A DNA stretch of 33,114 bases from the NCBI GenBank assembly GCA_001179505.1, contig CDMY01000672.1, positions 1 to 33,114 on the forward strand, in the 5' to 3' direction. Below the pieces are notes generated by a model that did no database searches, was not told the DNA's origin, and saw only the letters and a list, made by a program, of their open reading frames with translations. The position numbers were made by a program, and so were the translations under genes. Positions 869 to 33,114 of the stretch are shown here, piece after piece (the stretch's first letter is position 1; every line of letters starts with the position of its first letter). The DNA comes from Vitrella brassicaformis CCMP3155 (taxonomy: Eukaryota > Protista > Chromerida).

Positions 869-918
869 ACGGTAAGAACGACGTGCGGAGGCAGATATTG
901 TGAGTTTCGGTTTGTCAA

Positions 919-958
919 TGTGTGTGTGTGTCTGTATGTGTGTGTGTGTGTGTGTGTG
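919..958 (+). repeat. (TG)n microsatellite
   Basis: Near-perfect TG dinucleotide run with two interruptions. Confidence 0.9.
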
Positions 959-2589: not shown

Positions 2590-3186
2590 GTGATCCAGCA
2601 ATCACGATCAAAGCTGCAGCAGATCTCTCAAACGATGGCTGCACACGCTCCGTGGCTCCGTGGCTGTGTCCTTTTCGTCCGTCCCCGGGGTTCTGGTCGC
2701 GGCGTCAGCTCGCAAAGTTTCAGCTCGCAATCGTGAGATCTGCGAAATAATTCAGGCTCCCTACCACCGCCAAGAGTCTGGCAGGGGACTGCTGCGCCGG
2801 ATTTGCCTCAAACGGCGGCGTTTTCTCCCACCCATTGTTGAAGGGTGCTTCCGCTTCTTCAGCTGATGCGGAGGCGCGGTGTCACGGCACAGATGGACGG
2901 CAAACCGCTGCACGTAGACTGGTAAGCCAAGGGAGAGAACGGAGGGAGGGAGAGAGGCGGCCGTATAGATGTGCCCATGGATCAGCCAGCGTCTCTTAAG
3001 AGCTGCAGAGAGAGAGAGGTGCCGTGCTGTGTGTTGTGTGTTGGTGTTGGTGCCATCGACACGGCTGCACATCCGTTTCTTCTCCCTGCGGTGTGTGTGC
3101 GTGTTTTCAGGCCATACGTCTAGACGAGCATAGATATCACATCCGTCCGTCCGACACTCTTCCTTCCTCCTGAGTGAGTCGGCGCC

Positions 3187-6100
3187 ATGGGAGCGTGCAT
3201 GTCCAAAGCGTTGGTGGACGAGACATACAAGAAGAAGGTCGACAGCGAGCGGCGCCCGAAGAGCTCCAAACCGTCGGCATCGACCACTCCCCGCGTCAGG
3301 CAGTCGCCCAAGTTCGGTCCCTCAGAGCCGCCCCCGCCCCTCCCTCGGGCGCCACATCCATATGTCGTCACGGCGCAGTACAGCGCGTATTTCTACCCCT
3401 CCATCCCGCCCAACTGCCCGCCCTCGGCGCTCGAGACGCTGGGCATGACGGCCATCCGGTTCTCGCAGAAGGTGGTGGGCCACCAGAACTGGTGCAACAG
3501 CCAGTCGGAGCCGAGGCTGCCCACCGACCTGGCCATCGAGATGTGTCAGAGCCTTGACGAGCTGCCGATGCGGCCGTGGGCCATGGTGGCCAAGTACCTG
3601 AGGTGCAGGCTCGTGAGCAACATGCAGCGGCTGACGGAGGCGCTCAAGGGCCACAGCAGCAATGGGGGAGGGGGAGGCGGAGGTCCGGTGGAGGCTGCCG
3701 ATATTGAGCTAGAAGACGACAATGCGTCGCTGCTGGGGGATAGTTTTGACGGCTTTGAGTGCGGGTGGGACGAAAGGGGCACGGGTGAGGAGGTGGATCT
3801 GTTCGGCAACGGCGAGGTGGTCAAGAAGATTTTGAAGGAGGGGGAGGCCAAGCCGCTCAGGGGGTGGCCTTATCGCGGTGTGGCTGTGGTGGACCTGGCA
3901 ATGTCGCCCAAGGATGTCATCAAATACGGTACGGTCGGTAGGTCAGATACATACATGGTCGCACACGCACAGAGAGAGGCAGGCAGGCAGGCAAGGCCAG
4001 ACCGGAGAGCTGCGCCCCTCCCCTCCCCCTCTCTCTCTCCGGTCTGTGCCGTACCTGCGTGTGTCGTGCGTGTGTGTGTGTTGTGTGTTGGTTGTCCTCA
4101 TATGTCAAGGGGGGATCAACTTCTCATCACCTCCTCCTTCTGACGATGCTCATGGGCATGCTGCGTCTTCTCCGTCACGCATGTCAGACCTCGCCAAGAC
4201 GGACATCCACGTGCCCCTCGACCCACACACCGAGGAGCAGTACCAGATCGTGACGCTGCAGATCACCGACACCGTCACCCTCAACGTCATCACCGAACTC
4301 AGATGCGGACTCATGACGATGAAAAGAGGTGTGTGTGGAGGGGGGGACGGGTGAGGAATGTCGCAATAGCCCGTTTGTGTGTGTGTGTGTGTGTGTCAGG
4401 AGAGCGTTCTGTGTTTGTGTTTCGCAACGCCTTCCACCGGTACCCCGACCCGAACGGGGAGCCAGACGTCAAGGTCAAGCCCGAGGGGGCGTGGCGCTAC
4501 ACCATCACTCTCAAGGACGTCCTCCCCCCGCACCACGACCGGCACATCCCACACCCACTCCCCCCGATGAGCGAGGGCTCCACCGACCGCTCCCTCACCG
4601 CCAACACGACAGCCACCTCCGCCCCCCTCCCCCACGCAAACGGTGGCGGCGCGTCGGTGTCGGTGACAGCGGCGTACGAGCAGCTCATGGCCACTCAACA
4701 GGACCTGCAGCGGCTGTTCGAGCAGCTCGAGTGGCTGTGTCGGATGGTGCTGCAGATGCTCACCGACGACACCGGGACGACGGGTTTGGATGCCGGAGGG
4801 GGCGAGGACGGCCGGCGTGGGCTCAGGGACGTGCTCATCCACTTCTTGGAGGAGTACTACATCCAGGCCAACCAGCAGCTGCAGACGAACCGGGATCTCA
4901 AGCCCTCGTTCTTCCACCTGCTGGCCATGCCACTCGACGCCAAGGAGAATGCCAAAGACGTGAGGCCCGACGGCACCGCCAAACCCTCGCCCGACGACAA
5001 GCAGATGGAGGAGAACAGGACCGCCTTCACTGAGTGGGCCTACCACCGCGGGCACGACAAGGCCCATGGCGACCACAGCGGGCTCCTGCGCTTCGCCGCG
5101 CAGGGCTTCGAGTACAAGGGCGTTTTCTTCCGCCTCGTCACGTCGGAGAGCGAGTGGCGCTTCATCCAGGACCAGATCGTGCTGATCAAGCAGGCCCTCT
5201 TCGACAACGACACCGACCCCTGCCCCCCACTGCTGGCGTGCGCCGAGGGCAACGGCGGCCGGCTGATCGCATCCCCCCTGCTGCCGCTCAGTTGGCTGCT
5301 CGGCCGGTTCGCCCCCGAGCCCCCAATGCCGATCACCAACCGGCTGCCGTCCGACGGCCCCATCGACACGGTGTGCGTCGTGAGCCGGCAGGACAACGGC
5401 ATCCCGCAGCTGGACGTCTGCCGCATCCAAGCAGACGACTGGGAGCATTTCGCCATGGTGGCGCAGGAGAGGGTGGGGTCGGAGCTGCACTTCTTCCCCC
5501 CCGGGGCGGCGACGGTCCACGGGCCGCCCATGTCGGAGCTGTTCGGGCAGTTCTGCGCCGTGCTGACGTCGTCGGGCAGCGCCAAGGAGGGCGAGGAGAC
5601 CAGCAACGACGATGGAGGCGGCGTCAAGGACGACAACCACCCGCTGCCCTGGACGAGCGACGACTTCGTCCTGGCCTTCACCACGCCCCTTCCGCCATAC
5701 CCCCCATCTATCCGCCAACAGAAGGCCAGCGATGGGGCGCCCCCGCAGCCATCCGTCGAGTGGGCTGGGGACGGCTGGCCCGATTTTGACGAGCGCACAC
5801 ATGACCGGCAGGACACCATCGAGACGCAGGAGGGCGGCCCCATCAGCCCGTTTGACGAGCGCATGCCGCGCAGCAACAACAACAACACCAACAACAGCAG
5901 CAGTATCAGCCCGGCCGGCGGCTTGACGCCCAGGATCCGCAACGACCTGGACAGTTTCCTCAAGGGCGAGGCGGGCTACGAGATCATCGACCACCTGCGC
6001 AACACACTGGTCAACGGCGACGGCATCCACGTCGACTCGCCCACGCCCCCCACGGCCCCAGCTCCCCTTCGCCCGCCCCCAGAGGCGCCAAAGCAGCCGG

Positions 6101-16234: not shown

Positions 16235-17545
16235 CTACTTGAGCACCACCCACGGCGCATCACGCCGAACGTCAAAGGAATTGCTCCGCCTCAGCCGCGG
16301 GCTCGATCCGCACCAGCTGCACATCCAGTGGTGCACCGCAACGCTCTGGCTGGCCACATAAATCTGCGAATCGTCTTCGGCCAGAGCCAGCAGGGCACAC
16401 CCCTGCCAAGCCCACCACTCTGTGGCAAAAGGATTTCTCGGCGTCGGCAGAACGGCCTTGAAAGATGCTGGATCGCGCTTGCAGTAGTGAGCCAACTGGT
16501 TGTTCGATGCAGCATATTCGCCATACACCACATCGAAGTCGGTCACCATGACAGACCCCAATGGAGGCCGCTCACATGGCTGGCTCTCGTCCTCCATGTC
16601 CAGGGCTTTGTGGATGAGAGCCGTCAGTTTCTGCGGGCCGGTACAGCCGATAGGATCGCCTTGGCAGTCCCCGTTGGTTGTCGCATTGCCGAGAGTCTGG
16701 ACTGTCTGGTTGAGGAACTCGCCGATGAGCGGATGCCGGGGTGTCGCGGCGATCCATGCGTTGGAGACAAACGGCCTCGCCTCGTCGTCGACGTGCTCCA
16801 GGAGAAACACCTACGAGACAAGCACACACACATCACAGACAGCCGGGCGGCCTGGCTGCTTGTGCATCTGACTTACATGCAGCAGGTGCTCCTCGCCGAC
16901 GATAAAGTCCTTCCCCTGAGCCTCGGCTTCCTGCAGCAGACCCTCGTATGGCCTCAGACATTCGTAGTCCATGTCTTGATAGATGCCGCCATAAATCCAC
17001 AACACCAGCAAGCGGCCAACGTCCGCGAGAGTGATGCCCCGCAGCTCATCCCAAACGGCTGAGAAGCCGGGGAAGTGCTCATCCAACAGTGCTTGCAGCG
17101 ACGCGTGCGTGTAGACGTAGTGCTCCATTGTGGGGTTGTGGTCATGACACGACTGCATCCAGCCCTTGAACATGGTTGGCAGCTCCCGCTCCTTCCATGT
17201 CTGGTGGATAATGCGAGGGAAGACCGGCTCCTCTCTCCGCCTCGCGCTGCCACATGCTGTTGTCCTGGAGGCAATTACCTCCTCTCTTCGGGTCAGCCTC
17301 TCTGCTCGCCAGGAAACACTCACGCCGCCAGCGCCGACGAAAACAGCAGCCGTTGACGATTCCGGTGACGCCGCTTCAGGCTGGACCAGATGTGCAGGCG
17401 GGGCAGATCCGGCGGAAGAGTGGAACAAGGCAAAGAGAATCACTGAGATGGCCGATGTGATGACGCAGCCCAGCCAAAAGCGGGAGGGAACTGGCGGCAG
17501 CGAGAGAGGTGACTTGACTCCCATCTTGGGCTTAGGAGAGCCCAT
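16235..17545 (-). CDS. Glycosyltransferase family 32, tandem paralog, copy B (~414 aa)
   Basis: Exons 17545-16877 and 16810-16235, with a 66-nt phase-0 intron at the same position as in copy A. Same motifs: FWLGCVITSAISVILF anchor, FPRIIHQTWK, YGGIYQDMDYECLRP, SNAWIAATPRHP, AVHHW. Confidence 0.87.
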
Positions 17546-17585
17546 TGCGTTCGTTGAAAGGACTCGAGCTCAGAACGTGAGCTTG

Positions 17586-17602
17586 CAGGGTTTCGAACCC
17601 TG
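17586..17602. promoter_or_regulatory. Palindromic telo-box-like element CAGGGTT-TCG-AACCCTG upstream of GT32 copy B
   Basis: 7-bp inverted repeat about 40 bp upstream of the ATG at 17545. It is conserved with the copy A element while the flanking sequence differs. Confidence 0.35.
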
Positions 17603-17767
17603 ACACCGCGCGGCTCACCCCTCGCGTTTGCAATTCGGCATGGTGTTCATTGTCCACATTCATTCACATTTGGCACGTGAGCACGTGAAAAGCAAAAGAA
17701 ATCGCATCATGCATGTCGACCAAACTGTTCGCATCAGCAGTCTGTCTCAACGAGTTCTGCCGATTGA

Positions 17768-20700
17768 TTATTTCCTGGAGCTCCTTTGCCTCTTGTCCTG
17801 CAGCCACGCACCGGGAATACCATCAATAGAGACGTGTCAAACTGCATACAGCCGTGCACCACTGCAGTGGGACGTGTGTCCTCACCTCTGTTGGCTCCTG
17901 CGTGTTCGCCTGTTCTTCCTCCTGTCTCTTCAGCTCCCGCCGCAGCCCACGCAAGAAGGGCTCATACCGCTCCACCCACAGCTTGTCGAAGCTCTCGACA
18001 GCCTGAACACACAGACATGCGCACAAATCAGCCATATCCGCATGGACGCATCGAATCCTTCCTGTGTGTCTCACCATGTAGGTCTTGTGCTTGTTGAGCC
18101 CTTTCTTGTTGAGTCCCGCGCCGAGAAATGTCGACAGGCCCTGCATGGCCCTCGCCACCAGCTCAAAGAGGGACGTCCGATGGAGTAACAAGACTGTGCC
18201 CCCAACGAGTGGCGCCACACGGGCGACGATCGAGGCCACATACATGAGCAGGAATGCCAACCAGTCGATGACGATTGTGCCGGCCGATAGCAGTAGGAGC
18301 ACAGATGCTGTGGCCACGACTGCCCAAGAGGTCGCAGGCGATCGCCACTTGAGAATCCCTCGGAGGGTTTCGATTTTCAACAGCAGTTTGCGGCTCTTCT
18401 TCTGCAAAAAAAAGAGACATGAGCTTGGATCGACCCGTAGAGACACAGCATTCTCTTACCTGTGCAAGCCTGATGCGGTCCTTGACATGTGACGGTGCTC
18501 CGGCCAGCACGAATGCCAGCCATGGGCCAAGCTCTAGCTCCGTTTCCTGCCCCTCATCAATGTCCTCCTTTTTATTCTCAACTGACACAGCAGAGAAGGG
18601 CGGGTGACAGACATATGTGGTGTGTGGGGGTGCTCATGTCTCCAGCTTACGGTTCTTGGTACTGCTTGGTGAGATGTCCTTCAGCCTATCCGTGACTCCA
18701 GTAAGGACTGCGCCTGGAGTTGCCGCCACCCCCTCTATCGCATCTGCGGCCAGATTGAGGGTGCCGCCTACCACACCGGTCACGGCATCGACTGCACCAG
18801 TCCCGAGACCCACAGCCATGCCGGAAAAACCGCCCCTTTGAAAGCCCTGCACCGGAGACTCAACCAGGGAAGCCACACCACCCAGAGTGGAGGTGGCGAA
18901 GCCTTCCACGCCCGTTAGGAGCGCATCGCCAACATGGGAGAGCTTCTTACGGCGGCGCACTGGCGAAGACGACCCTGAATGGACAGCCAAAAGAGGCGAG
19001 GATGTGATATTACTCTCTTTCGTGTGAAGACGGTCAATGCTGACTTCCGTAGATGAGTGCGCCGGGTGTGTTGGCCAGTCCTCTCAGCGTGCTGCTTGCG
19101 AAGCCTCCCACCCCGCTGAATGTGCCCGTGACGGCCCCTGTGACACCTGATGTAAGGCCGGTGACAGCGCCGAGTGCCCCTCGCTCCGATGCGCCCTCGA
19201 ATGTTTCAGTAAAGATGCCCACAAAGCCGCCAAGTGTCTGCTCGTGAAGGGCCTGGGAGACCACGAAGACAGACAGGCAAATGTGTCAGTAGGGATGAGG
19301 GTTGACCTTAAAGCCGGCGGCAAGGCCTTGGCCGACGTCCGTCGGGTCCAGCTGCTGCGTGGTCTCAAGCTCTTCCATCATGTTGAGGAAACGATCCTGA
19401 AAGGTGGGCACGTCGAGGGGCGGCAGAGGGTGTTTGCGCGTGTGCATCATGAGTGCGATGAAGCAGATGAAGAAGAACGGCAGGATGAGGGCCGGGAAGA
19501 AATAAAGCAGCCAGAAGCCCAGCAGCACAAGCGAGGACACAATGGGGTCCTTCCAGTCGAGCACTGAGTTCGCCCAAACAGCAGCCTACAGCAACGACAC
19601 ACAAAGGAGGAAAGTGCATATATACAAATGTCTCCGTAACCTCCCCTTTGCCGTCTACCTTTTCCAGCATTTCGTCCCAGAGAATGAGCTTCATGCGCAT
19701 CCCATTGGCATACAGCTGGTTGAGGTCATAAACCGGCAGATGCTTGGGCCGGGGTGGCACCGGCAGGCACCCAGCCAAAAGCTCTCCCGTCATCGTGAAC
19801 TTGGCAGTGACTCGCAGACGGATGAAGCCTGCATATAGGAGACATTCCATGGCATTCATCAAAGATGCAGTAAGTGAGCATTCGTCGGCTTGATTGTGTT
19901 GTCGAGAGACCTGCGCCCTGCATCTCGAAGGCCTGTGACGGCAGGATCCGGAACCATCCCTCGACGGTCTGGCCGCTGACCAGGTGCTTGATGGGGAAGA
20001 TGATCTCCCCCAGCAGATCGTCATAGCCGACAACATCGAAGTCATATACCTGTCAAAGACACGGAAGCATCCGTACCGAGCCGATTAATGTGTGCGTCTC
20101 CTTTGTCCACTGACCTCCAGATGCAGCACACTCATGGGATGGTGGACGTGCATGACGAAGCTTTCGTTCCAGACCGGCTCGAGCGTCCTGCTCTGCGTCG
20201 TGCTCGTGCCCACAGAGATCATCGCGCGCTTGAGGGGAGACAGAGACAGGATCTTGGGGTGGGACACAGACGGATCAAGGGGCTTTGACAGCGTCATCTT
20301 CACATACGGATCACTGGCACACGGACACATCGCCATCCATGCCCATCAGTGTCCATCATCTTGGGCCATTCGTTCCCACCTGAATCCATTTGTGTCGGCT
20401 GCAGGCAGCCCCTTGGCCTCCAGCACGGTGATGGTGAACTCACAGTACCCCTGCCTCTTGAGCGCCTCTGCCGGATTCGTCAGGCACAGCCACGGGTCAA
20501 ACGGTGCTGGGCCCTTCAAAGCAGCAAGGTCCGTCTTGAGTGTTGGTTCAGGCAGCACACGTGTAGGCGGACTCGTCGACTTCTCGAATGCACTCGGCGC
20601 CGACTCCTTTGCCCGCATCGACAAGCCACGTGAAAGGCCCAACATTCCCGTCTTCCTGGTGTCCTCCGTGGCTGAAGACGGGCTGGGGCTGGCGCTTGCC

Positions 20701-20882
20701 GCATGTGTGGCCTCATCCTCTTTTTTCCTTTTGTCAGTCGCTGAGGCTGATGGAGCGACAGCATCGCTCGTCTCCTTCGGACGAGATGGTGTGGCCTCCC
20801 CAGGGATGACGCGAGGGGGCTCCTGCCCAGAGAGGGCCTGCTCAGGAGGCCGGTGCCGGCCGAGGCAACACGAACACAGCAT
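17768..20882 (-). CDS. MCTP-like protein: Ca2+-binding-type C2 domain, transmembrane region, duplicated Gly-rich amphipathic insert, PRT_C-like C-terminal membrane region (~805 aa, 11 exons)
   Basis: Exons 20882-20380, 20313-20115, 20049-19911, 19828-19659, 19585-19307, 19252-19045, 18974-18651, 18581-18460, 18401-18075, 18002-17886 and 17797-17768 sum to 2418 nt with consistent phases. C2 motifs: TVLEAKGLPAADTNGFSDPYVK, TLEPVWNESF, VYDFDVVGYDDLLGE. MCTP-type segments: LDWKDPIVSSLVLL and LRGILKWRSPATSW followed by hydrophobic helices. Confidence 0.8.
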
Positions 20883-21038
20883 TCTCTTCCGCTGCCGGGC
20901 TGCCCGGCCCCCAGACAACAATAGTATGAAACAATAGTAGCCCCGCGCTGTGCCTAACATCACCATCAGAAATGGTCTAAGCAGAACACAAGACAACCAA
21001 CAACAGCCTCACCAGAAGATAGTACGTCGCAGGGAGGG
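20883..21038. promoter_or_regulatory. Candidate compact bidirectional promoter between the MCTP-like and GH16-like genes
   Basis: Only 156 bp separate the two divergent ATGs (20882 on the minus strand, 21039 on the plus strand). Confidence 0.4.
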
Positions 21039-22206
21039 ATGACAGGGCTGTTTCTTGTGCTGAGTATCCTTGTCCTTGCGCACGCTGCAAAGGGATCTTC
21101 CGGAAGCCTCAGGGATCCAGAGAGGAAGCGGCTCGCCTGCCACCCTGCAGACGCTCTTGAGGTCACAGTAGGGGACGACTTCGACGCCAAGAAACTCGAT
21201 ACCAACACGTGGATGGTGCTGGAGGGGTGCAGCAAGAAGATGTGCCGCCGGCCAGACAAGGTGCAGCTGAGGGATGGGAACCTGGAGCTGCACATGGGCC
21301 CTTCGAAGCCATACAAAGCAGCCGACGGACGCGTCTTCTCGTACGAAGGAGGCGGCATTTTGATGAACGAAACGCTTCACTTTGGCTACTACGAGGCGCG
21401 AGTCGCATTCTCTGGTGCGCCGGGTTACGTCCAAGTCTTCTGGACCACCACCTCTCCCAGCTTTCTCGAGTGAGCAACCCAGGCAAACGATGCGCTGCTC
21501 GTTGATCCTGTTCTGTTGTTCGTTTCTGTTTGGGTCATGCATCTGGCAGGCCCGTTGACGGTCCACAGCAGGAGTTTGACGTGGTCCAGTACCCAGGCAA
21601 CAGAAGCTACTACGAAATCACCACATGGCGGTGGAGCCCTGAGCCGTATGCTATCGTCGGGAAGAGCCGCATCCTTCTGCAGCAGCCCACCAGGCTGTCA
21701 GCCAAGGCCTCTGAAGGCTGCCCCTTGATGACGCCTGCACTCTCCAAGTCGTTTACTAAAGAGAAGCTGGAGGAGCTCGGTGACAACAAGTGGGAGGGGG
21801 AGCCAGAACCGATGAAGCCTCCGTCAAACGAGACGGACGCCGAGGACGCACAAGCCGCCCAGCTGGACATGACAGGGTGGCATACGTATGGCTTACTCTA
21901 CACACCTGAACAGGTACGACCACACAGCAGGACAGCACACGCGTGTGTGTGTGTGTGTGTGTGTGTGGCTCACTGCTTCTCTTGTCCATTGATTGCTGCT
22001 CACAGGCCTTTTTCTACCTAGATGGTGTGCCGATACGCATGATCGATCTGGCGAAGGCCCTGCCTGGTGATGAGCTGGCCCGCCAGCACGTGCTGCTGAC
22101 GACACAAGTGACGGGGGAGACTGTGGGGGAGGTTGGTGATGCGAGTGGCGTCATGTATGTGGACTACTTCAGATTTCATCAGCTGCCTGGCTCCGAGACG
22201 CAATGA
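21039..22206 (+). CDS. Secreted glycoside hydrolase family 16-like protein (~331 aa, 3 exons) with a non-canonical catalytic motif
   Basis: Exons 21039-21469, 21550-21913 and 22006-22206 with phases 2 and 0. Signal peptide MTGLFLVLSILVLAHA. GH16 hallmarks: DDFD..LDTNTW, FGYYEARV, EFDVVQ, WHTYGLLYTPEQAFFYLDG, MYVDYFRFHQ. Confidence 0.8.
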
Positions 22207-22463
22207 ATGACTTGTGCGTGTCGGGCTGACGTTCCCGATTGATCCATTTAGACACCAGTCCGATTGTCAAAATCCATCCACACACCACACAGGCACTTTG
22301 GAACCTAGTACAAAACTAGGAAGGACGAAATCAGGCATCATCAGCCAGTGTCTTCCTCTAGCAATATACGACACAGGCCACACACCAGTAGGGTCAACGG
22401 ACACGACACCAGCAGGCAGGCACAGTTGAGAGAGACCTAGTACGCAGGCAAAAAGCCAAGACA

Positions 22464-25400
22464 TCAGCAGCGGGAGCCGTCCTCCCATCGCACAAACACA
22501 CGACCGCTCGACGGACACCGGCGACGCACCTGCACCAAATGCTTCTTGCCCTGGATGAAAGGGCACGACACACATGAGACTGGCAGGTTGTTGTGTATCA
22601 GTGCATGCGTACCTGCAGCTTTGCATCGACGGACTTGGCGACGTCGAGTATGATGCGCCATTCGTCAAACTGACCGACCTGCAGCTCCACCATGACGTCG
22701 AACGGCGGCTCGCCTTTGCGCTCCGTCCGCGTCTTGCGATCAGAGCCCTCACGCGAGGCACGAGCATCACCCAGAATCACAGTCCTGAACAGATGGAACA
22801 ACGGCCGATGAATACCCATCTCATCGTCAGTGTCTTGGCCTCACTGAGGCTCACTCGAAGCCTCCCAGAAGCCCTCGCAGTTCTGGGTTGCGCATGAGAC
22901 CAACGAAGTCGCCGTGAGCGCTGGCCAGGAGCCGTACTTTGCGTTGAGCCACGGTGCGGGCGGCATCCACCTGCACCCATCGTCACACCGTCACACACAG
23001 AGTATGCAATGCCCAGCTGCACTTATATGAGTGCATCGTCATTCACCTGCGACTTATGGCCGATTTCGTCAATGATCAGGACAACCGGTGTGTGATTCTG
23101 TACGGCCTCGATCATCACCTGACGCCAAGCAGGAGGGTAATACACCACGTGTTTGTGTGTCGCGCGACTTGGTCACCTGGTCCTGCTCGGCGACATTCCT
23201 GACCATCAGGCGGATGGCCTCCCCGACTGATGGATGCAGCACGTGCCCACCGCCGCAGATCTCATTGCTGAAACAAAAGGTGTGCACAAGCACAAAAAGA
23301 TTGATTGTATAATTGTCCATGTCTGGGGGCGCGGCGCTTCTGTGTGGTTACCTGGTGTCGACGATGCACACACGGAGATCCTTTGCAGTGAGTACGCGAG
23401 AGGCCTCACGGATGATGGTCGTCTTGCCGCACCCAGGAGCACCTGCACGCAAGTGGGTGGACACACAGTGACCCTGACGCCCACACGAAGAGGCCTTGCT
23501 TACCGAGAAAGAGGATAGAATGGCCGTCGTCGGCTGCCACACCTTTCTCGGGCGACAGAAGCAGATCTTGGACCATGTCGGTGTTGCCCTTCATGGCGCG
23601 ACCAACCTGCGGGCAAAATGGCACATACATGAAATCCCATGAAATGCACTCATCTTCTTGCCACGTTTCTTGCCCACCCTCATGGTCAGGCCGATCACCA
23701 CCCGCTCGTCAGATTTGTCTCGTATGGCACTGATGCGATGGAGTGAGCCAGGAAGGACGGCACGGTTGTCAGGCCTGGACACACAGACATCGACGAAGCA
23801 CGCAATGCGTGACGTTAGCTGATGCTCTCCTTCCCGTGTCCGTGCCCAACCCGATGTTGTTTTTGCCCCCCAGCTTGTCGACGGCGAAGTCGAGATGCAT
23901 AGTGTCGACCACCACCTCGGGCTTGCTCGGCGCCAGGTACCTCTTCTTGGGCTCTTCGCGGGTGATCGCGTGCGGGCGCTGCCCGATGTACATGACAATC
24001 TCGACCAGGAAGACGTCGCTTTCTGCTTCCTCTGTCCCCTCATTCCTGGCCCTCGCTTGCTCCAGCACGCCGCCTCTCTCCCAGAAGTCAGAGTGCACCA
24101 GCTGCAGGAGGCTCTTAATGTCTGTCGTGTCCTTCAGACCCATCTCATCAGCTGCCAATGATGCAGACCCATTGTCGCTGCCGCCATTCTTGACCGCCAG
24201 CACCTCAATCGAGCGCATTTGGTAGGTCTGCGGGTCAAAGCCGACCTCTGTCTCGCCAGGACGGGCCCGCATGTCGTCTCCCTCCCCCTCTGCAGCAGCC
24301 ATGCGGGCGAGTCGTCGATCCGAGGCCTTGCAGATGAGCCGCATCTCCTCAGGCGTTGTCACTGACGCCACCTCATCGACAGCACGCAAAAGGCCAGCGA
24401 CGGTCTGATTGGAAGCCGCCTTGGACACGGAATGCACCCACGTCAGGATGTCGCTAAGCGAAGCCAGAGGCGTCTCATGAACTATGTCGTACGCCAGCTG
24501 GAGGTCCCAACAGAACCGGATGGACGAGGGGGCGTCAGCTGCTGGCAGCTCGAGAGCCTTGACGATGGTCGGCAGGTTGTATGCCACTTTGAGGACGAAT
24601 GGTGAGGCCAGGAGACCGTTGAGCAGCTCCCGGGCAAGCTGACACCCCATGCCCTCCAGTTCCAGCACAGCCACGATGACACCACCATTGCTCGTCAAAG
24701 GGAGAAAGGAGGCCTCTGCCGCCGCACTCTCTGCTGTGCCATTCACACTCCCTGGCGCCAGGTAGCGTTCGGTGCCTTGGGCGAGCTTGACCTGGCCGAC
24801 AATGCGATGACACACACACACACACACGCACACTTGTCTCAATGAATAATTGCTTATTGACGTTGTCTTGCCTACCTTGAAGTTGACAGCAGGGGTATTC
24901 GGGGGGGCCTCCTCTACCTCGAAGACGTCCTCCCTCCGCCGAATGAGCTTCCTCAGTCGTTCGTACAGTTTGCGCAGCTCGGCCTTGGTGTCGGCATTGG
25001 CAATCCAGCCAAATTGGACGGCCTGCCCGACAACTCGCTCCCGGAACAGAGGAAGAGGGGCGAGGTTATCGATGCCGTCCTTGAAGTGCGATCGACCACC
25101 GCGACCTGATTGATTCACGACGAAACAACGATCCGCCGCATTCCCCTCCTCTTCTTCCCACCATCGATGATCTGACATAGCGATGCGACGATCTGCTCCT
25201 CATCGCTTTCAGACGTGGATGCTGCCCCCAACTGACTTGTCGAGCCATTGGGGGCGGCGCCACCGGGGCTGCAACTTGGCGGGGCTGCAACTTGGCCGGG
25301 GCTGCAACTTGACTGCGGGACGAGGGCGCCAAAGCTGCCCTTTTCCTCGTCTTGTCCCACGCGAGACCACCACTGATGGCTGAAGAGCGTCGATTGCCCT

Positions 25401-26280
25401 GCTGCGGCCGGCTCACTCCTTAGGTCCTCAAAAAAAGCTGGCGAGGCAGCACGTGACGGAGAGGAGGGGGGGTCTTCCAACTGGAAGTTGTCGATCTCTG
25501 TCCACACACCGACGGCCAGACATCCTGCCTGCTCGTGCAGCGCCACCACTGGGGTCTTGCTCTTGTCAACCTCGGCCTTGATCAGCAGCGGATTGACCAC
25601 ATCCATGAAGAAGGGGCGAGCCCCGTAAGCCGTCTTGAAGGTGAGCAAAGAGGGGAACGACCCAACCTTGGGCTCCTCGACAAAAGGTGGCCAACGCGTC
25701 CGGTCCTCGCTGCACATTCAAACGCAGAAAGCACTGAGTAGCGTGAGCTGCAGCAGGGCCCTGATGCAGCTCTTTGATGTGACTCCTCTTTGATGTGACT
25801 CTTCACCTGGGAGGAAGTGTGTACGGCCGCAGTTTGATGGGTTTGCCGTGGTCCATGCCCATTTCTGTGACCTGGTCGAATATCCTGCGGCTGTCCAGGT
25901 CTTTGCAGCAGACTGTGGCGAAAACCGCCTTGCCGTCCCTCCAGCAGTCGACGATCTCCGGCACCTTGCAGCTCTGCGCTATCTCGGGATGAGCCTTGAT
26001 GAACCTTTCGCAGTGCTTAGTGACATTGGTCCGCACGTCATCCTTTGACCTGCAGGCACAGCACGAGAGTCGTGTGTGTGATTCGCCTAAGCAGATGCAT
26101 ACACACGCCTGTGCACCGACCAGGTTTGAGGAATGTTGCTCAGGAACACAGCCAGGCTTTCGCGGATGGATGGGTGGACCTGGAGGGGTCACAACGTAGG
26201 CCATCACGCTCGTGAATGCCATTGACCTTGTCTGTATCTATCTCTACCTCTGAGAAGGGCGTGCCAACAGGCCACGTCAT
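22464..26280 (-). CDS. ycf45/SpoIIIAA-like P-loop ATPase with a long N-terminal extension including a degenerate 3'-5' exonuclease-like region (~960 aa, 13 exons)
   Basis: Exons 26280-26180, 26049-25807, 25709-25237, 25171-24876, 24791-23851, 23774-23678, 23606-23504, 23442-23352, 23267-23177, 23118-23047, 22970-22855, 22784-22613 and 22550-22464 are phase-consistent. Family motifs: DNRAVLPGSLHRISAIRDK, GLTMRVGRAMKG, Walker A GAPGCGKTT, VDTSNEICGGG, VMIEAVQNHTP, Walker B LIIDEIG, SAHG, LLGGFETVILGD. The 5' end is uncertain: an acceptor at 26292 suggests a further upstream exon. Confidence 0.8.
25265..25312 (+). repeat. Three-copy coding minisatellite GGGGCTGCAACTTG with 16- and 17-bp periods
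   Basis: Copies start at 25265, 25281 and 25298, inside an exon of the ATPase gene. Confidence 0.9.
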
Positions 26281-26939
26281 GGAGCCCGGAGCTGAGGCGA
26301 ACAACAACGACACAGGCACCAGACACCAGACGAAGACAGGTCCATGATCCTCAGGGGTCTTTCTCAGCAGCTTTCTTCCCAGGGTTGCTTGCAGACATCT
26401 CGAGTGAAAGAGTGGGGTGATGCTGAAGCGCGGGCGGCTATTCCTGGGTATTCCTGCTGGGGATGGGTTGCCAAGGAGGGTTTGAGAGGGATAACTCGCA
26501 TCTCGACGATCGAACTCATTGCTCTCTTCACAGTTAACATGAAATGCTCTGGTGTGGCCACCGAAGTATGCCAGCAACCATAGTCTGCACTCGAGATACG
26601 TTCATTCATTATTCATCACCGGTCCCGCTCAACGCACCAAGAAATAAATAGAACAAAGGCCTTCCTTCTCACGCCACGGACAACTCTTGCCCCTCAACAC
26701 AACACGACGGACGGACGGACGGACGGATGAATCAGTCAGTCAGTCAGCCAATCGCCACATATGAAAAGTACATGCGTATCGTACACACACGTTACATTAA
26801 GCACCCTTGGCACCCATCGAGCCACTAATCAATCACCACCAACCAACAAACTTCCAGCTGGCCAACCAACCCTGGTACCCCCCTCCCCTCCCCTCCCCTA
26901 CTATGCTATCCTACACACCTGTCTGTACGCAACACTCAC

Positions 26940-29900
26940 TCAACGCTTTCCCCCCCTATGTGAACTCCATTTGTAGTCCTGACGAGGTGGTGGCGGTGGG
27001 GGCCCTCGGCCGTCCCGCCGGGGCTGCGGAGAACGGGAAGAGCCCCCTCGAGTGATGTCGCGAGGGCCTCTGTCGTCGACGCGCGGATTCTTACTGCGAG
27101 GGCCTGGGCTGAAGGGTTTGCGTGGAGGTGACCGCTCTCGCTTGTCCCTATCCCTTCCCCTCTCGTCGCCGTCTCGTCCGCGGTCCCGCTCGCGTGGGCC
27201 CACCCTGTCGATGCTCATGTTGCCGCCCTCACGTGAATGCCGCGGTGCGCCGATCGGAGACCTGTTGTGGGCCCTGTCGTGGTGCGCTGGCCTGTGCGGC
27301 GAATGCACACCTCGCTCTCGCTCTCGCTCTCGGATGGGAGGCGACCGCGGTCTGCCGGGAGACCCGCGGCCTCGAGGGGACGGCCTGACTGACACTGGCC
27401 GATCGTCACACCGTCGCTGGCCATCATATGGCCTCCGCTGTGGTGGGGACGGGCCATCTGCTCGCTTGCCGTCCTCTCGATGACGTGGCGCTGGGCGGAC
27501 AACCTCCCTTCCTGGCGGCATGCGACGATCGGCACTTGGGCGCGGTGGACCCTCCTCGGGCTGTGGGCCCCCTCGTATATCAGGCGGCCTGACAGCATTT
27601 GGGGGCTGCCGATGAGCGCCTGGCGGGGGTGCTGTTGCAGATGCCTTGGGCTCGGTGGCGGATGCGGGGCCGTCGATGACAGGCGATATCAGGGCCGGCA
27701 GGGACGGTGTCATCGGCGGGGTGGCCGTATGAGCGAGAAGCTGAGGGTCCATCAATGGGGGCTGCCCGGTGGGAGGCCTCACGCAGTTCTGCAGCTCCTC
27801 TCTCGTCCCCTCCTTGATCTCCTTGTCCGTCAGCTGCACCCCCTGCTTGACCTCCTCCACGTCCAGCAGACCCACACCCGAGTCGAACTCAGCCGCCGTG
27901 AGGCAGGCTCGGCGGGCTATGGCAGGGGCGGCGAGGCAGCGATGCTGGGGTGGCTGACGCACCAGATCGTCATGGCCCTCGTAGGCACGAGCGAGGCGCA
28001 CGGGGTCGGGGGTAAACTTCTGCTGAACGGCGAATAAATCCTGAGATTCAAGAGGGAGGGAAGAAACGATAATGATCATGAGCAGGGAGGGCCGCTTTCG
28101 GGTTGGCTGTTTGGTGTAGGTTAGGTTCTGTACCTCAGGAAGGACCGAGACGAGGGAGGCCTTCTCGACCCCCGCCAGCTTGCCGCGGTCGTCGAATACG
28201 GGCGACTCGAACGCGAGGTGGAATGAGTGGAGGAAATGGCGGCCGAGGAGCTGGCGCATCTGCCAGTACTCGCGACGGTGGTGGTCGCTCATGTATTTGG
28301 TGTCCCACAGAAGAGGCCAGCCGTTTTCCCCCCCCATGTGCACGCGGATTTGGTGCGTTTTACCTGACCAGCCAACAGCACAGCCAGGGTGAGGTGAGTG
28401 AGCAGCAGATGGACTTCCACTTCTCCCGCAACCGCAACCGCACCCACCTGTGTCGATCTTGAGATGCACAATCGACACAACTTCGTTCTCTTGCGCTGTG
28501 TGCGGGGGCCCCATGGTCAGCACGTCTTGAAGTGCGTAGTGGGTGATGGCTTTGTCGGTCTCGGAGCCCTGCACACACCACGTCGACACGCATGCCAACA
28601 CACACAAGACGTCACCAGCCTCACAACCGCCTATGCGTGCGTGGATCCGTCGGTGTCTGTCTGTCTGCTGACCGTGTCGTGTTCCTTTGAGACGAAGCCT
28701 CTCTCATCCGCCTGGTTTGTGATGTAGTTCTTGATGGTACCGATAGGCGGACTCGGAACGCCAAGCACCATGGCCTAAACAAGCAACAGAACACTTGACT
28801 CTGTGTCCTCTCTTCTCCCTCTCAGGCAGACAGGCAGGCTTGTAGCTAACCTAACGTACCTTGTAGATTTTGACGAATCCGGGTCCCTTGCGCTGCACAT
28901 TCCTGAGATGTTGGTAGGTGCGCTCGTCCTTGGCCAGCATCAGCAGCCCACTGGTGTTCATGTCCAGCCGCTGCATGAACCCGTTTGACAGATCCTTCCG
29001 ACCGAAGAGGGCCGGCATCTTGCACTGGCGCTTCTCGGGGTTGGTGGCGAACTCGGGACGCCATGGCTCGGGCTGACCCAAGTTGAAGTAGGCCCACACA
29101 GCGAGCTGCGGCTTGTCGGCCTCGCTGAGCTGCTTCTCGTCCTCCCACAGTCGTGGGTCGACCTTGTCGGTGCAACTGAACAACCACACACCACACCCTT
29201 CATGCCTCTCGTCTGGTCTCGTCCGCTTTTGGTCACTCACTCACCACTCCCATCCTTGCGGCTTGGAGATGACCCACGTGGTTGCGTACTCCGCATGAAT
29301 ATCAGGCTTCAGCAACGGCCCCCTCCTCCGCTCGTCAGCCCTCTCCCCCGGGGGCGACGGCCGTGCTGGCGCCCCGGCAGCATCCGGCGCGCTAAGCAGG
29401 GAAGCGCTCTGCGGCACTGGCAACGTGCTGCTCCTCAGAAAGCTCGGGGCGGCGGCGGGCTTCTGTGCGTCGGGTTTCTTCTCCTTGCGCTTGATGGCTG
29501 TGCGTCGGACGACCTTGGCCGGATCGACTTTGCGGGAGCTGTTTTGGCTCTTGGGCTGCTCGCCAGCTGCCCCATTGAGCCTGCTGCCGTCGGCGGACTT
29601 CTTGCTGGCCGGGGACACCTCCTTGGCCGCCTTCTTCTCGCTCGCCTTTGCCTTCTGCTCAGCAGTTCCCTCGCCACTGTCTCCCTTGTCGCTGAAAAGA
29701 GCCGGGAAAGGAGGGAGCTCGACAGCTGCTGTTGGAAGGGTGCCGTCAGTCTTGGCCTTGTCCATCTTGCGCTTCTTGGTCTCGCCGTCCTGGTCCTTCT
29801 CCTCTCCCTTGCGCTTCTTGGGCGCCTTGTTGGGCAGGGCATCGAAGGACGATCCCACCGATGCAGATGGCGTGTCCGCAGGGCTGCTGCCCTTGTCACT

Positions 29901-32523
29901 CTTGTCCGCCTTCTTGCCCCTGTCACTGTCGGCTTGTGCTACATCGGCAGCAGGCGCCTTGGCGGGTGAGAGAGGCCGTGGCTGCGGGTGCGTGTCGGTC
30001 TTCTTGAGCTTCTTCTTGGCGGCGGGGACGGCCTTGGGCTTGGCTGATCCTGCTGGGGACAAGGAGCGGGGGGCAGCACTGGGGGGAGTGTCTGAAGTGA
30101 TGATGATTCACATGGATGGGCGGGGGGGTGGGGTGGGTGGGTTTGTGCGCCGCGCCCTGTCTGTCGTGTCGTCACGTACCAGATTTGTTTGAGGCGCTCT
30201 TCTTCGCCTTGGCCTTGGCCTTCCTCTTGCGCATCTTCTCCACGATCCTGCACACACCACATCCAGCCGCCAGTCCCCAGTTGCCCGCAGCGATGAGATA
30301 TGATGTGGTCTGGTGTGGTGTGGTCTGGTGTGACGCGGGTTGCCTACTGTTTCTTCTTCCATTTGCGCTTGGCAGTGAGCATTTGGGTCTCGATGTCCTC
30401 GTCCAGAGGGGTGGAGAAGCTGCCGTGGGGGAAGGAGAACAAGACACGACACATGTGGGTGTGTATCGGCCACTCGTCCAACCATGCAGTCAGGAGATGC
30501 ACTTACTGTCTGCGTCTCTGCCACGTCGGCTTCTTGAAACCCTGCACACACACACACACATAAAAGCGGAGGAAGACAGCCGAATGAAGGCATGGCTGCT
30601 GGCTCGTCGCCGGCCTGCATGTGTTGTCTGTCCTGTGTGTGTGGTTTGTATCATCTGACCTCCCAGTAGGTGCGCCACTTGCCCCGTCCGTTCCGGCTCT
30701 TGGCATACTCACCTATCCGCTGCACAGCACACCAATCAAACCAGCACAAGACACGTGCCCGTCATCAACCAGCAAATCGATGACCGCGCATCTCGTTCGT
30801 CCATTGGGTTGCATGTACATCTGTTCCCTCCCTCCCTCACCTCAACAACGAAATCTGCCCCTTGCACATTGGCGTCTTCCTCCTCAGACGTGTCCTCCTC
30901 TGTGACCGACCCACTCGTGTCCTTGCACTCCGTCTCACTCACACTCATCTCGTCCGTCAGCACCTCATCCACGCCACGATCCTTCGACTTGGCCGTCGAC
31001 CGGCTCTTGACACTGTAGCTCGTCGGTGACCCGCCCTTTAAGGGCCCAGGAGCAATGCTCGCCTGCTCAGCGCCCTTGGACGGCTCGCCGTTCTCATCAT
31101 CCTGTTGAGGTTGCGGTTTCTTGAGACGGCCCTTCCTCGGCTTCTCAGCAGCCCCGTCGGCCGCGGAAGACCGCAGTGCCACGGGACCGGCCTGAGGCAT
31201 GGCATTTTGAGCAGTGAAGGGTGCTGGCGGCGTCTCTGGGGGGAGAGATGGAGCGGGGGGCGGGGAGAGGGAGAATGGGCGAGGTGGGGGGGATGGGGGC
31301 TCCTCCAGTGGGACAGGCTGCTCGGCAGGCGGCGGGCTGGCAGCAGGAAGGGAAGGGGCCTCACAAGTAGGCTCCTCGGGAGCCGCCTTGGCCTCTTCTG
31401 CAGCCTTCTCTCCTGACGACGGTCTCTCAGCGGCGATAGCAGCGGCCACCGTCTCCTCAGACCGCTTCTGTACCGCCGCCGACGCTGCTGACTCCTCTTC
31501 CTCCGCCTTCTTTCGGGCCTCCTCTTTCTCCTCCTCCTCTGCCCTCTTTCGAGCCAGCTTCTCCTCCAGCTTGCGGGTCGCCCACTCTGGCCTCTTGACG
31601 ACGGGACTCTCACAGAAGTCGCACTCATCCATCTCGAGCGTCCACCGACTGCCGCATTTTCCCGGGCACAACCAGCGGTTGTCGCTGTCGTCCAATAGGT
31701 CTTTCTCTGCACCATCTGCCGTGTCGTCAGCTCCTGCGGGGGACGGTGGTGGTGGGGCGGGGGTCGCCTCGCTGGGCGCGGCGGCAGCAGCTGCTGGTGC
31801 TGTTGCAGGGGAAGGACGAGGAGAGGGAGGGGGAGCAGGGGCAGGGAGGGCAGCTGGTGACGCATCGTCGGCTGTGTCGCCGAAGATGTCTTGAAGCCAG
31901 GCGATTTCGTCTGACGGATGGTTCTTGATAGCTATCGCCCCGTCCCCGACGGCATTCTCGCTCTCCGGCTGCTGCTGCTCTTGCACCTGCTGGCCCTCGT
32001 CAGCTGCTGCCACCGCCACCGCCGCCGCCGCCGCAGCAGCGGGAGGCGCCTCAGTAGGTGTGTCGGCAGCGAGCTGGGGTGCGGCTGGAGGGGCTATGGG
32101 CGGTTCTGGGGCCGCAGACGACTCAGCAGGTGGGGCCTCGAGGAGATCTGAAACAAAGCCCATACAGTACAAACACCCAGAGTGGGTGCACTGCAGGCAC
32201 GTTGATTCGCATCAGACAGACAGACACGTACCTTTGGCTGTGATAGTTCCGTCCTTGATGGCCTGGACAAACAGCTCAGCCAAATCTGCGGCGCTGACGT
32301 CACGCCCCTCCCCGCCCTCCAGCTCCAGCCGATATGCTGCCGCACAACCGTCCGAACCCTTCGATGCGCCGGCAAACAGAGCCGAACGGCCGTCGTCTTG
32401 AAGGGTGAGGCGGGTCTTGTGTGCCGTGAGGCCGAAGATGGGGATCCACTGCGCCTTGTTGTCCTCTCCGCTGCCATCCCCGCACGCACCAGATGACTGC
32501 GATAACGCTGCGGCGGCCGCCAT
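26940..32523 (-). CDS. RluA-family pseudouridine synthase with an N-terminal RanBP2-type zinc finger, a chromodomain-like module and a C-terminal RS/RD/Pro-rich tail (~1,503 aa, 12 exons)
   Basis: Exons 32523-32232, 32147-30841, 30719-30660, 30541-30507, 30419-30348, 30247-30180, 30052-29245, 29175-28860, 28774-28673, 28568-28448, 28363-28134 and 28040-26940 sum to 4512 nt with consistent phases. RluA motifs: VISKPQG, QRLDMNTSGLLMLAK (catalytic Asp codon 28964-28962), KIYKAMVLG, IDTGKTHQIRVHM, RHFLHSFHLAF. Confidence 0.78.
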
Positions 32524-33114
32524 CCCTCACAGCAGGCCGACAACACTCCGCATCAAGCACCAGATTCTTCCCACAAGCAGCTGCAGGCATCTATGCGCAT
32601 GACGCTCATTTCCACACCTGGTTCGAAAGCTCGCGGGGCGCCAGCTAAGGGCTCCTTGAAACCGAGAGATCTGGCGCTAAACCACGGCCGCGTGTTTCTC
32701 AGCTTGGTCCTCTGACCGAGCCTGAGGTGAAAACACTTCGCTGTGCCCTCACAAAGTCTGAATTCGCTCGAATCTTGGAAAAACGTTGGGCTCATGCTCG
32801 CGTCCCTAGCTTGCCTGCTACTCCCTCTCTCCCCCCGCCTATCTCTCTAACGGCTCAGGCAGTGTCTTTGCTTCCATGGCGTTCTTATGCATCTGGTCAG
32901 ACAAGGGTGTCTGGCAGAGCACTTTTTCAAGCACGTAAGCTCCTCTTTGTCCCTGGTTGTCGCCTTTTCAATCATTCCTTTCCCGTGTCATTCCCACGCT
33001 TGCATCGTTCCTTTGCTCCTCCTCTGCGTGAGTGCCGGTGTGACCTTGACTCGCTCGTGTGCATGGCATCATACGTGCCAGCGCAGTCATATATGGAAGT
33101 GCTTCAGCATGGAC

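What the first reader, a model, noticed from the sequence alone, without database searches (positions are those of the whole stretch)
30507..30855. Chromodomain hidden across micro-exons of a pseudouridine synthase gene: a candidate chromatin-reading RNA-modifying enzyme
None of the supplied ORFs shows this domain. Joining the end of exon 32147-30841 to the 60-nt exon 30719-30660, the 35-nt exon 30541-30507 and the next exon gives ADFVVERIGEYAKSRNGRGKWRTYWEGFKKPTWQRRRHF (seen in sequence; all GT-AG and phase-consistent). This follows the chromodomain pattern (Y/F)-x-V-E-x-I...W-x-G-(Y/F)...T-W-(E/Q), and aromatic residues F, W and F occupy the methyl-lysine cage positions (established family knowledge). 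The same spliced frame continues through a Lys-rich, NLS-like linker (KRKWKKKQ...KRKAKAKAKK) into an RluA-type domain with its catalytic Asp. Inference: a nuclear enzyme that could be recruited by methylated histones or nucleic acid to pseudouridylate nascent RNA. I know of no characterised stand-alone RluA-family synthase with a chromodomain.
Basis: partly seen in the sequence, partly recalled or inferred. Interest (0 to 1): 0.82.

Follow-up and report, generated by a model that had tools for sequence, protein, structure and literature searches.

The report
Pseudouridine synthase gene with chromodomain-like module
An expressed 12-exon gene of the alga Vitrella brassicaformis encodes a 1516-residue RNA pseudouridine synthase that also carries a small segment, split over tiny exons, resembling a histone-mark-reading chromodomain; the gene and enzyme are solid, but the chromodomain is only probable.

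Summary
A 5058-nt spliced transcript contig covers the whole gene as one open frame. The eleventh acceptor lies at 30091, not 30052, which adds 13 residues in frame. The product is the public protein CEM29349.1 / A0A0G4GHZ3 (Vitrella brassicaformis, 1516 aa), named only as a pseudouridine synthase.

- **RluA domain:** firm. Pfam PF00849 scores E 9.5e-17, and the catalytic Asp965 and the GKTHQIRVH motif are present.
- **Chromodomain:** suggestive, not proven.
  - For: all seven Protein Data Bank hits are chromodomains (E 0.06-0.15). Three aromatic residues sit at the cage positions. It is the only aromatic-rich island in about 580 low-complexity residues. The top protein-language-model hit is Chromo. 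Only 3 of 20,000 shuffles reach its score.
  - Against: Pfam Chromo finds nothing, hhalign gives P = 0.02, and the only chromodomain-like AlphaFold model was built with a chromodomain alignment, so it is circular.
- **Relatives:** no orthologue was found, and no paper on this fusion.
- **Earlier scan notes:** notes s1-248665 and s1-212011 report chromatin-reader + RluA fusions in other genes of this genome. I did not check them.

Verdict: a real gene, a probable new variant of a known enzyme family, of moderate interest.

The parts
26624..32713 (-). Whole transcription unit: 12 exons, about 190-nt 5' UTR and about 316-nt 3' UTR. The CDS runs 32523..26940 and gives 1516 aa (CEM29349.1 / A0A0G4GHZ3).
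   Evidence: L002 transcript contig aligned to the window in 12 blocks. Joints. The model is identical to P0001.
30841..32147 (-). Exon 2 (1307 nt). It encodes a low-complexity Ala/Pro/Glu-rich region. Its last five codons (30855-30841, DFVVE) begin the chromo-like segment and include F530, proposed cage residue 1.
30660..30719 (-). Micro-exon 3 (60 nt): RIGEYAKSRNGRGKWRTYWE. It covers proposed strands 1-2 and includes W552, proposed cage residue 2.
   Evidence: Joints 30841|30719 and 30660|30541 are seen in X1, X6 and X7. BLAST block.
30507..30541 (-). Micro-exon 4 (35 nt): GFKKPTWQRRR(H). It includes F555 (proposed cage residue 3), the TW motif and a basic patch.
   Evidence: Joints 30660|30541 and 30507|30419..
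30348..30419 (-). Exon 5 (72 nt): (H)FSTPLDEDIETQMLTAKRKWKKK(Q). This is the proposed C-terminal helix of the module.
   Evidence: joints. The helix is predicted with pLDDT 79-95 even from the single sequence and again.
30180..30247 (-). Exon 6 (68 nt): IVEKMRKRKAKAKAKKSASNKS. This is the start of the Lys-rich linker.
29245..30091 (-). Exon 7 (847 nt), with the corrected acceptor at 30091. It encodes the Lys/Ala/Ser/Pro-rich linker with NLS-like PKKRK...KKRK, and ends with the first strand of the RluA domain (WVISKPQGW).
   Evidence: Joint 30091|30180 in X6 and X7..
28134..29318 (-). RluA-type catalytic domain, aa 870-1135, over the end of exon 7 and exons 8-11. Catalytic Asp965 lies at 28964-28962 (QRLDMNTSG). 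KIYKAMV lies at 28871-28766. GKTHQIRVH lies at 28448-28338.
   Evidence: Pfam PF00849 E 9.5e-17, 62.1 bits. TIGR00005 E 8.8e-23. PDB hits RluC, RluA, RluD, RPUSD4 and RPUSD1, with an alignment. Coordinates.
26940..28040 (-). Exon 12. It encodes a C-terminal extension and an Arg/Pro/Gly/Asp/Ser-rich tail (aa 1290-1516: 53 R, 45 P, 18 S, with RERERER and RDRGRD runs), then the stop codon.
   Evidence: composition.
31609..31686 (-). Four-cysteine zinc-ribbon-like motif, aa 252-277 (WLCPGKCGSRWTLEMDECDFC).
   Evidence: The best PDB hit is the ZNF265 RanBP2-type zinc finger at E 0.42, which is weak. No Pfam hit.

Best explanation
This is one expressed nuclear gene of Vitrella brassicaformis. It encodes a 1516-residue stand-alone (protein-only, not snoRNA-guided) pseudouridine synthase of the RluA family. 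Two things are shown: the 12-exon structure with its single mRNA, and an RluA catalytic domain that keeps the catalytic Asp (D965), the KxY tyrosine and the GxTHQIRVH motif. The following are inferred. (a) Residues about 529-589, encoded across the end of exon 2 and three small exons, form a divergent chromodomain-like (Royal-family) module with F530, W552 and F555 at the aromatic-cage positions. (b) The PKKRK/KKRK-rich linker sends the protein to the nucleus. (c) The Arg-rich RE/RD/RS-like tail, and possibly the chromo-like module, hold the enzyme at chromatin or at nascent ribonucleoprotein, so that it isomerises uridines in nuclear RNA (snRNA, pre-mRNA or other nascent transcripts). The module's ligand is unresolved. 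It could be a methyl-lysine, given the complete aromatic triad, or nucleic acid, given the basic WQRRRHF face.
For: Gene and transcript. Public identity. RluA domain: Pfam 62.1 bits against a cut-off of 26.8, TIGR00005 E 8.8e-23, and the RluC alignment with HRLDRDTSG/QRLDMNTSG and GRTHQIRVH/GKTHQIRVH. Chromo-like module:
- phmmer against 177,635 PDB sequences returns only chromodomains (CDY1, CDYL, CDYL2; 7 of 7; E 0.06-0.15), aligned in register with V-E-x-I, W-x-G-aromatic and T-W.
- In the alignment with 25 Pfam-positive chromodomains, I, W, G and W are invariant.
- The language-model nearest cluster is Chromo (0.87, 156 shared features). The Pfam-proven RluA part of the same protein gets the same values (0.87, 157).
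- It is the only aromatic-rich island (6-7 F/W/Y per 40 aa) between residues about 280 and 860.
- 3 of 20,000 composition-preserving shuffles reach its best phmmer score.
- AlphaFold2 with a chromodomain alignment gives three strands plus a helix at pLDDT 82, matching CBX1, CDYL and Rhino at target-normalised TM-score (TMt) 0.6-0.75.
Context: human PUS1, PUS7 and RPUSD4 are reported to modify pre-mRNA co-transcriptionally (bioRxiv 10.1101/2020.08.29.273565, abstract seen).
Against: - Pfam Chromo (PF00385) gives no hit on the segment or on the whole protein, even with E<=10 allowed.
- hhalign against 13 chromodomains gives P 0.02, probability 2.4%.
- A CDY-family HMM scores the full protein at only E 0.01 for one sequence, and 54 of 20,000 shuffles beat the real segment.
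- Single chromodomains against full-length P0001 give E about 1e-4 per protein. That is not significant proteome-wide.
- AlphaFold2 on the single sequence gave low-confidence helices instead of strands.
- The confident model depends on an alignment made of chromodomains, so it is circular.
- The strand 2-3 loop is two residues shorter than in the aligned chromodomains, and the conserved WEPE is WQRR.
- No orthologue exists to show conservation.
- Localisation, ligand and substrates are untested.
Confidence: 0.6

Rival explanations
1. There is no chromodomain. The protein is a nuclear RluA-type pseudouridine synthase with long disordered arms. Residues 529-589 are a different small fold, or a short amphipathic or basic element whose W/K/R-rich composition and a few motif letters mimic a chromodomain by chance.
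For: No Pfam Chromo hit. hhalign P 0.02. Per-protein E about 1e-4 for single chromodomain queries implies chance hits in a proteome of over 20,000 proteins. Some shuffles of the same composition reach the score. Single-sequence AlphaFold2 is helical.
Against: All PDB hits and all ten named language-model neighbours are chromodomain or its clan, the family named a priori. The register places aromatics at all three cage positions and keeps the V-E-x-I, W-x-G and T-W core. The island has the size of a chromodomain and is followed by a helix where one is expected.
Confidence: 0.3
2. The module has a chromodomain fold but serves as an RNA or nucleic-acid-binding substrate-recognition domain. It would take the role that S4 or PUA domains play in other pseudouridine synthases, rather than acting as a histone methyl-lysine reader.
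For: The face following strand 3 is strongly basic (KKPTWQRRRH) where the aligned chromodomains have acidic D/E-TWEPE. The protein lacks any other recognised RNA-binding domain. From established knowledge, some chromodomains (MOF, MSL3, CBX7, Chp1) bind RNA; this was not tested here.
Against: All three aromatic-cage positions are occupied by F/W/F, which is the signature of methyl-lysine readers. No direct data exist either way.
Confidence: 0.25
3. Two separate genes or transcripts: an N-terminal low-complexity protein (32523-30841) and an independent RluA gene, with the micro-exons not used.
For: Nothing was found. The only caveat is that assembled contigs can in principle bridge neighbouring genes (tool note).
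Against: One contig carries a single uninterrupted 1516-codon ORF with UTRs of about 190 and 316 nt. The micro-exon joints are seen in three runs from two or more studies. No alternative joints were reported.
Confidence: 0.03

Closest known systems
RluA-family pseudouridine synthases (E. coli RluC, RluA, RluD, TruC; human RPUSD1-4)
   Same: Same catalytic domain: PF00849 and the TIGR00005 subfamily profile match it. The motif II Asp, the KxY motif and the GxTHQIRVH motif are kept. It acts as a protein alone, without a guide RNA.
   Different: It is very divergent. The best PDB E-value is 1.8e-7, and no relative below E 1e-4 was found among 1.84 billion representatives. It has an insert of about 55 residues between the first strand and motif II. 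It has His-to-Gln in HRLD and Arg-to-Lys in GRTHQ. There is no S4 domain. The domain is embedded in a 1516-residue protein with about 870 N-terminal and about 380 C-terminal extra residues.
Canonical chromodomains (HP1/CBX, CDY/CDYL, Rhino, Chp1; Pfam PF00385)
   Same: It keeps the motif aromatic-x-V-E-x-I ... W-x-G-aromatic ... T-W, followed by a helix. Aromatic residues occupy the three cage positions. The best and only PDB sequence hits are chromodomains, and the alignment-assisted model superposes at TMt 0.6-0.75.
   Different: It is below Pfam detection. The loop is two residues shorter. WEPE is replaced by WQRR, giving a basic face. Several otherwise near-invariant positions differ (Y-L-x-R before the Trp reads W-R-x-Y). 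Binding is untested.
Other chromatin-reader + RluA genes of Vitrella noted by this scan (s1-248665, s1-212011)
   Same: Same genome and, according to those notes, the same design principle: a chromodomain-type reader N-terminal to an intact RluA domain.
   Different: I could not fetch them, so kinship with this gene is untested. They did not appear among the hits of the RluA searches, so they are not close paralogues. One of them is said to be missed by the public annotation, whereas this gene is fully annotated.
Chromatin-associated, co-transcriptionally acting pseudouridine synthases of animals (PUS1, PUS7, RPUSD4; dyskerin with RNA polymerase II)
   Same: The proposed site of action is nascent nuclear RNA (bioRxiv 10.1101/2020.08.29.273565; PMC10381945; abstracts).
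   Different: Those enzymes carry no chromatin-reader domain in the same polypeptide. Here a reader-like module would be covalently fused to the enzyme.

Membership tests
RluA-family pseudouridine synthase (PF00849 / TIGR00005) | Match to Pfam PseudoU_synth_2 above the gathering score | tested here: met
   62.1 bits against a cut-off of 26.8, E 9.5e-17, aa 940-1083.
RluA-family pseudouridine synthase (PF00849 / TIGR00005) | Catalytic Asp in motif II (xRLDxxTSG) | tested here: met
   QRLDMNTSG (D965) is aligned to HRLDRDTSG of RluC.
RluA-family pseudouridine synthase (PF00849 / TIGR00005) | Motif III GxxHQ(I/L)RxH and the KxY tyrosine | tested here: met
   GKTHQIRVH (aa 1074-1082) and KIYKAMV (aa 996-1002).
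RluA-family pseudouridine synthase (PF00849 / TIGR00005) | NCBIfam rluA_subfam full-length cut-off | tested here: not met
   81 bits against a cut-off of 192.7. The model is trained on bacteria and includes the S4 part. The match covers profile positions 119-275 only.
RluA-family pseudouridine synthase (PF00849 / TIGR00005) | U-to-pseudouridine isomerase activity | not testable with these tools
   Needs an enzyme assay or pseudouridine mapping.
Chromodomain (PF00385, Royal superfamily) | Match to the Pfam Chromo profile | tested here: not met
   No hit on the 70-aa segment, on aa 515-600 or on the full protein, with up to E 10 allowed.
Chromodomain (PF00385, Royal superfamily) | Significant sequence similarity to solved or Pfam-positive chromodomains | tested here: inconclusive
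   PDB phmmer E 0.06-0.15, chromodomains only. hhalign P 0.02. Shuffle test 3 of 20,000 by phmmer and 54 of 20,000 by HMM.
Chromodomain (PF00385, Royal superfamily) | Three aromatic cage residues at the canonical positions | tested here: met
   F530, W552 and F555 align with Y/F, W and Y of CDY1/CDYL2. This depends on the weak alignment being correct.
Chromodomain (PF00385, Royal superfamily) | Fold: three-stranded antiparallel sheet packed against a C-terminal helix | tested here: inconclusive
   Obtained at pLDDT 82 only with a chromodomain alignment, which is circular. The single-sequence model is poor and helical.
Chromodomain (PF00385, Royal superfamily) | Binding of methyl-lysine peptides | not testable with these tools
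   Needs peptide arrays or ITC.
RanBP2-type zinc finger | W-x-C-x(2-4)-C-x(10)-C-x2-C with a profile match | tested here: inconclusive
   The Cys spacing fits. The best PDB hit is ZNF265 at E 0.42. There is no Pfam hit.

The most novel reading that the evidence does not exclude
Vitrella has evolved stand-alone pseudouridine synthases that are covalently tethered to histone-mark readers. This would be one of at least three such genes in the genome. In that case a chromatin state (a specific methyl-lysine) would directly dictate where nascent RNA is pseudouridylated, giving a one-polypeptide link between the histone code and the epitranscriptome that has not been described in any organism.
Probability: 0.2. 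Interest if true: 0.8.

Novelty: new variant of a known kind. Interest (0 to 1): 0.5.

Why it matters
How pseudouridine synthases choose sites on nuclear pre-mRNA is an open question. In animals they act co-transcriptionally, but no chromatin-targeting domain is known in them. A synthase with a built-in chromatin or RNP reader would give a directly testable model for chromatin-directed RNA modification. It sits in a free-living relative of apicomplexan parasites. If the module is not a chromodomain, the gene is still an unusually elaborate, lineage-restricted nuclear RluA enzyme with a zinc-ribbon-like motif, an NLS-rich linker and an Arg-rich tail, but it would be of ordinary interest.

Tried and rejected
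- The word-indexed protein search with the chromo segment alone found no candidate. The same search with the RluA region found only the protein itself.
- The exhaustive representative search with the C-terminal half of the RluA domain found the protein itself plus five weak fragments: unnamed except one labelled 23S rRNA pseudouridine synthase, no organism recorded. So there is no orthologue to build a natural alignment.
- The chromodomain set gathered for profiles is dominated by animal CDY/CDYL sequences. The HMM and hhalign tests are therefore narrower than a proper family profile.
- Single-sequence AlphaFold2 was uninformative.
- A random-sequence regex simulation timed out and was replaced by an analytic expectation.
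- I could not fetch the other Vitrella reader-RluA genes named in earlier notes.
- The two-gene reading is rejected.
Full report

- Run X6 holds one 5058-nt contig and X7 one 4403-nt contig that cross the gene with every intron removed.
- A 338-nt contig of X1, from another study and organism label, independently joins 30841|30719, 30660|30541, 30507|30419 and 30348|30247.
- The intron after exon 6 is 30179-30092, so exon 7 begins at 30091 rather than 30052. This adds 13 residues in frame, in the linker.

The look-up of encoding contigs returned the same transcript contig (ERR558152_9665, locus L002). It has an uninterrupted ORF at 191-4741 and aligns to the window in 12 blocks from 32713 to 26624. 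The contig fits a single mRNA with UTRs of about 190 and 316 nt, so the two-gene alternative is excluded. The library type of these runs is not on record. That they are RNA is my inference from the loss of all introns.

**Identity.** The corrected model is letter-for-letter the public protein CEM29349.1 / UniProt A0A0G4GHZ3 of Vitrella brassicaformis CCMP3155. That entry is 1516 aa and is named [quoted passage not shown]. The window is contig CDMY01000672.1 of GCA_001179505.1. The micro-exons are therefore already in the public gene model. What is not annotated is any domain in that segment.

**The enzyme part.**
- Pfam finds PF00849 at E 9.5e-17, 62.1 bits, aa 940-1083.
- NCBIfam's RluA subfamily profile gives E 8.8e-23 but stays below its full-length cut-off.
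- The best solved relatives are RluC (1.8e-7), RluA, RluD, RPUSD4 and RPUSD1. The RluC alignment places QRLDMNTSG on HRLDRDTSG and GKTHQIRVH on GRTHQIRVH.
- The catalytic Asp is D965 (28964-28962).
- The domain is very divergent. An exhaustive search of 1.84 billion representatives with its C-terminal half found only the protein itself plus five hits near E 1e-4 to 1e-3. A word-indexed search among long proteins found only itself.

**The chromo-like segment (aa 529-589; 30855-30247 across four exons).**

Evidence for:
- phmmer against all PDB sequences returns seven hits. All are CDY1/CDYL/CDYL2 chromodomains at E 0.06-0.15. They align in register on V-E-x-I, W-x-G-aromatic and T-W, with F530, W552 and F555 at the cage positions.
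- In an alignment with 25 Pfam-positive chromodomains, I, W, G and W are invariant.
- The protein-language-model neighbour search puts a Chromo cluster first (0.87, 156 shared features), and all ten named neighbours are in that family or clan. As an internal yardstick, the Pfam-proven RluA part of the same protein scores the same (0.87, 157). The N-terminal 100 residues reach only 0.75.
- The segment is the only aromatic-rich island between residues about 280 and 860, with 6-7 F/W/Y per 40 residues against 0-2 around it.
- Only 3 of 20,000 shuffles of the segment reach its best phmmer score against 14 chromodomains.
The motif was defined post hoc.

Evidence against:
- Pfam Chromo gives nothing on the segment or on the protein, with up to E 10 allowed.
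- hhalign against 13 chromodomains gives P 0.02, probability 2.4%.
- A CDY-family HMM scores the full protein at E 0.01 for a single sequence, and 54 of 20,000 shuffles beat the real segment.
- Single chromodomains against the full protein give E about 1e-4, which is not significant across a proteome.
- AlphaFold2 on the single sequence gave low-confidence helices, with only the C-terminal helix confident.
- With an alignment of chromodomains, AlphaFold2 gave strands at 532-540, 546-552 and 559-562 plus a helix. The model had pLDDT 82 and pTM 0.65, and Foldseek then returned CDYL, CBX1, Rhino and Chp1 at TMt 0.6-0.75. That result is circular. It only shows that the sequence is compatible with the fold.
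- The strand 2-3 loop is two residues shorter than in the aligned chromodomains, and WEPE is WQRR.

I put the chance of a chromodomain-type fold at about 0.6.

**Other parts.**
- The linker (aa 590-860) has 46 Lys in 271 residues and includes PKKRK...KKRK, a classical NLS-like pattern. This is read from the sequence and is an inference.
- The tail (aa 1290-1516) has 53 Arg, 45 Pro and 18 Ser, with RERERER and RDRGRD runs. These recall the Arg-rich tails of splicing factors, but I make that comparison from composition only.
- A four-Cys motif at aa 252-277 is weakly similar to the RanBP2-type zinc finger of ZNF265 (E 0.42).

**Mechanism proposed.**
- Shown: one mRNA and an intact RluA catalytic core.
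- Inferred: nuclear import through the basic linker. The Arg-rich tail and the chromo-like module would tether the enzyme to chromatin or nascent RNP. The enzyme would carry out guide-independent pseudouridylation of nuclear RNA.
- The module's ligand is open. The complete aromatic triad argues for methyl-lysine, and the basic face argues for nucleic acid.
[quoted passage not shown] Only their abstracts were seen.

**Novelty.**
- Full-text searches found no paper that combines RluA or PF00849 with a chromodomain.
- No nearest Atlas cluster combines both families.
- Earlier notes of this scan report chromatin-reader + RluA fusions in other genes of the same genome (s1-248665, s1-212011). They also report one first-reader chromodomain call that failed (s1-242734). 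I could not fetch or test those genes.
- They raise the prior for a real reader here. They also mean the design has already been flagged by the scan on other DNA of this genome.
- I class the finding as a new variant of a known kind, of moderate interest.

Noticed in passing
window 31609-31686 (-), aa 252-277: A four-cysteine motif, WLCPGKCGSRWTLEMDECDFC, sits in a second small ordered island. Its best PDB hit is the RNA-binding RanBP2-type zinc finger of ZNF265/ZRANB2 (E 0.42), and Pfam gives no hit. It could be a zinc ribbon.
   Followed up: partly
window 32523-32140 (-), aa 1-100: The N-terminal 100 residues look ordered (8-12 hydrophobic residues per 40), but Pfam finds nothing. The language-model nearest clusters are PTM/DIR17-like Tudor domains at 0.75, which is noise level. 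This is a faint lead to a second Royal-family module.
   Followed up: partly
window 26943-27623 (-), aa 1290-1516: The tail is rich in Arg, Pro, Gly, Asp and Ser, with RERERER and RDRGRDGDERGRDRDKRER runs. It resembles the RS/RD tails of splicing factors.
   Followed up: partly
window 28364-28447 and 28041-28133 (-): Introns 10 (84 nt) and 11 (93 nt) are multiples of three without stop codons. That is why the genomic ORF 26940-28607 reads straight through them. Retaining them would insert 28 or 31 residues inside the RluA domain. No retained form was seen in the contigs.
   Followed up: no
window 30147-30337 and 30529-30719: Contig depth spikes here (up to 4043), with many loose ends at 30304, 30332 and 30544. 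The spikes lie in the bins that hold introns 5 and 3, which carry simple repeats (CACCAGACCACA-type and TG runs), and the Lys-codon-rich exon 6. These sequences are evidently shared with many other transcripts or contigs.
   Followed up: no
L001 6835-16175 (window about 16940-26280): The neighbouring called genes are a 960-aa AAA/Spore_III_AA-type ATPase, a 331-aa protein with a faint Glyco_hydro_16 hit, an 833-aa C2-domain protein and a Gly_transf_sug glycosyltransferase. None has an evident link to the finding.
   Followed up: no
Both are in frame, but the contigs use neither; the real acceptor AG is at 30093-30092.
   Followed up: yes
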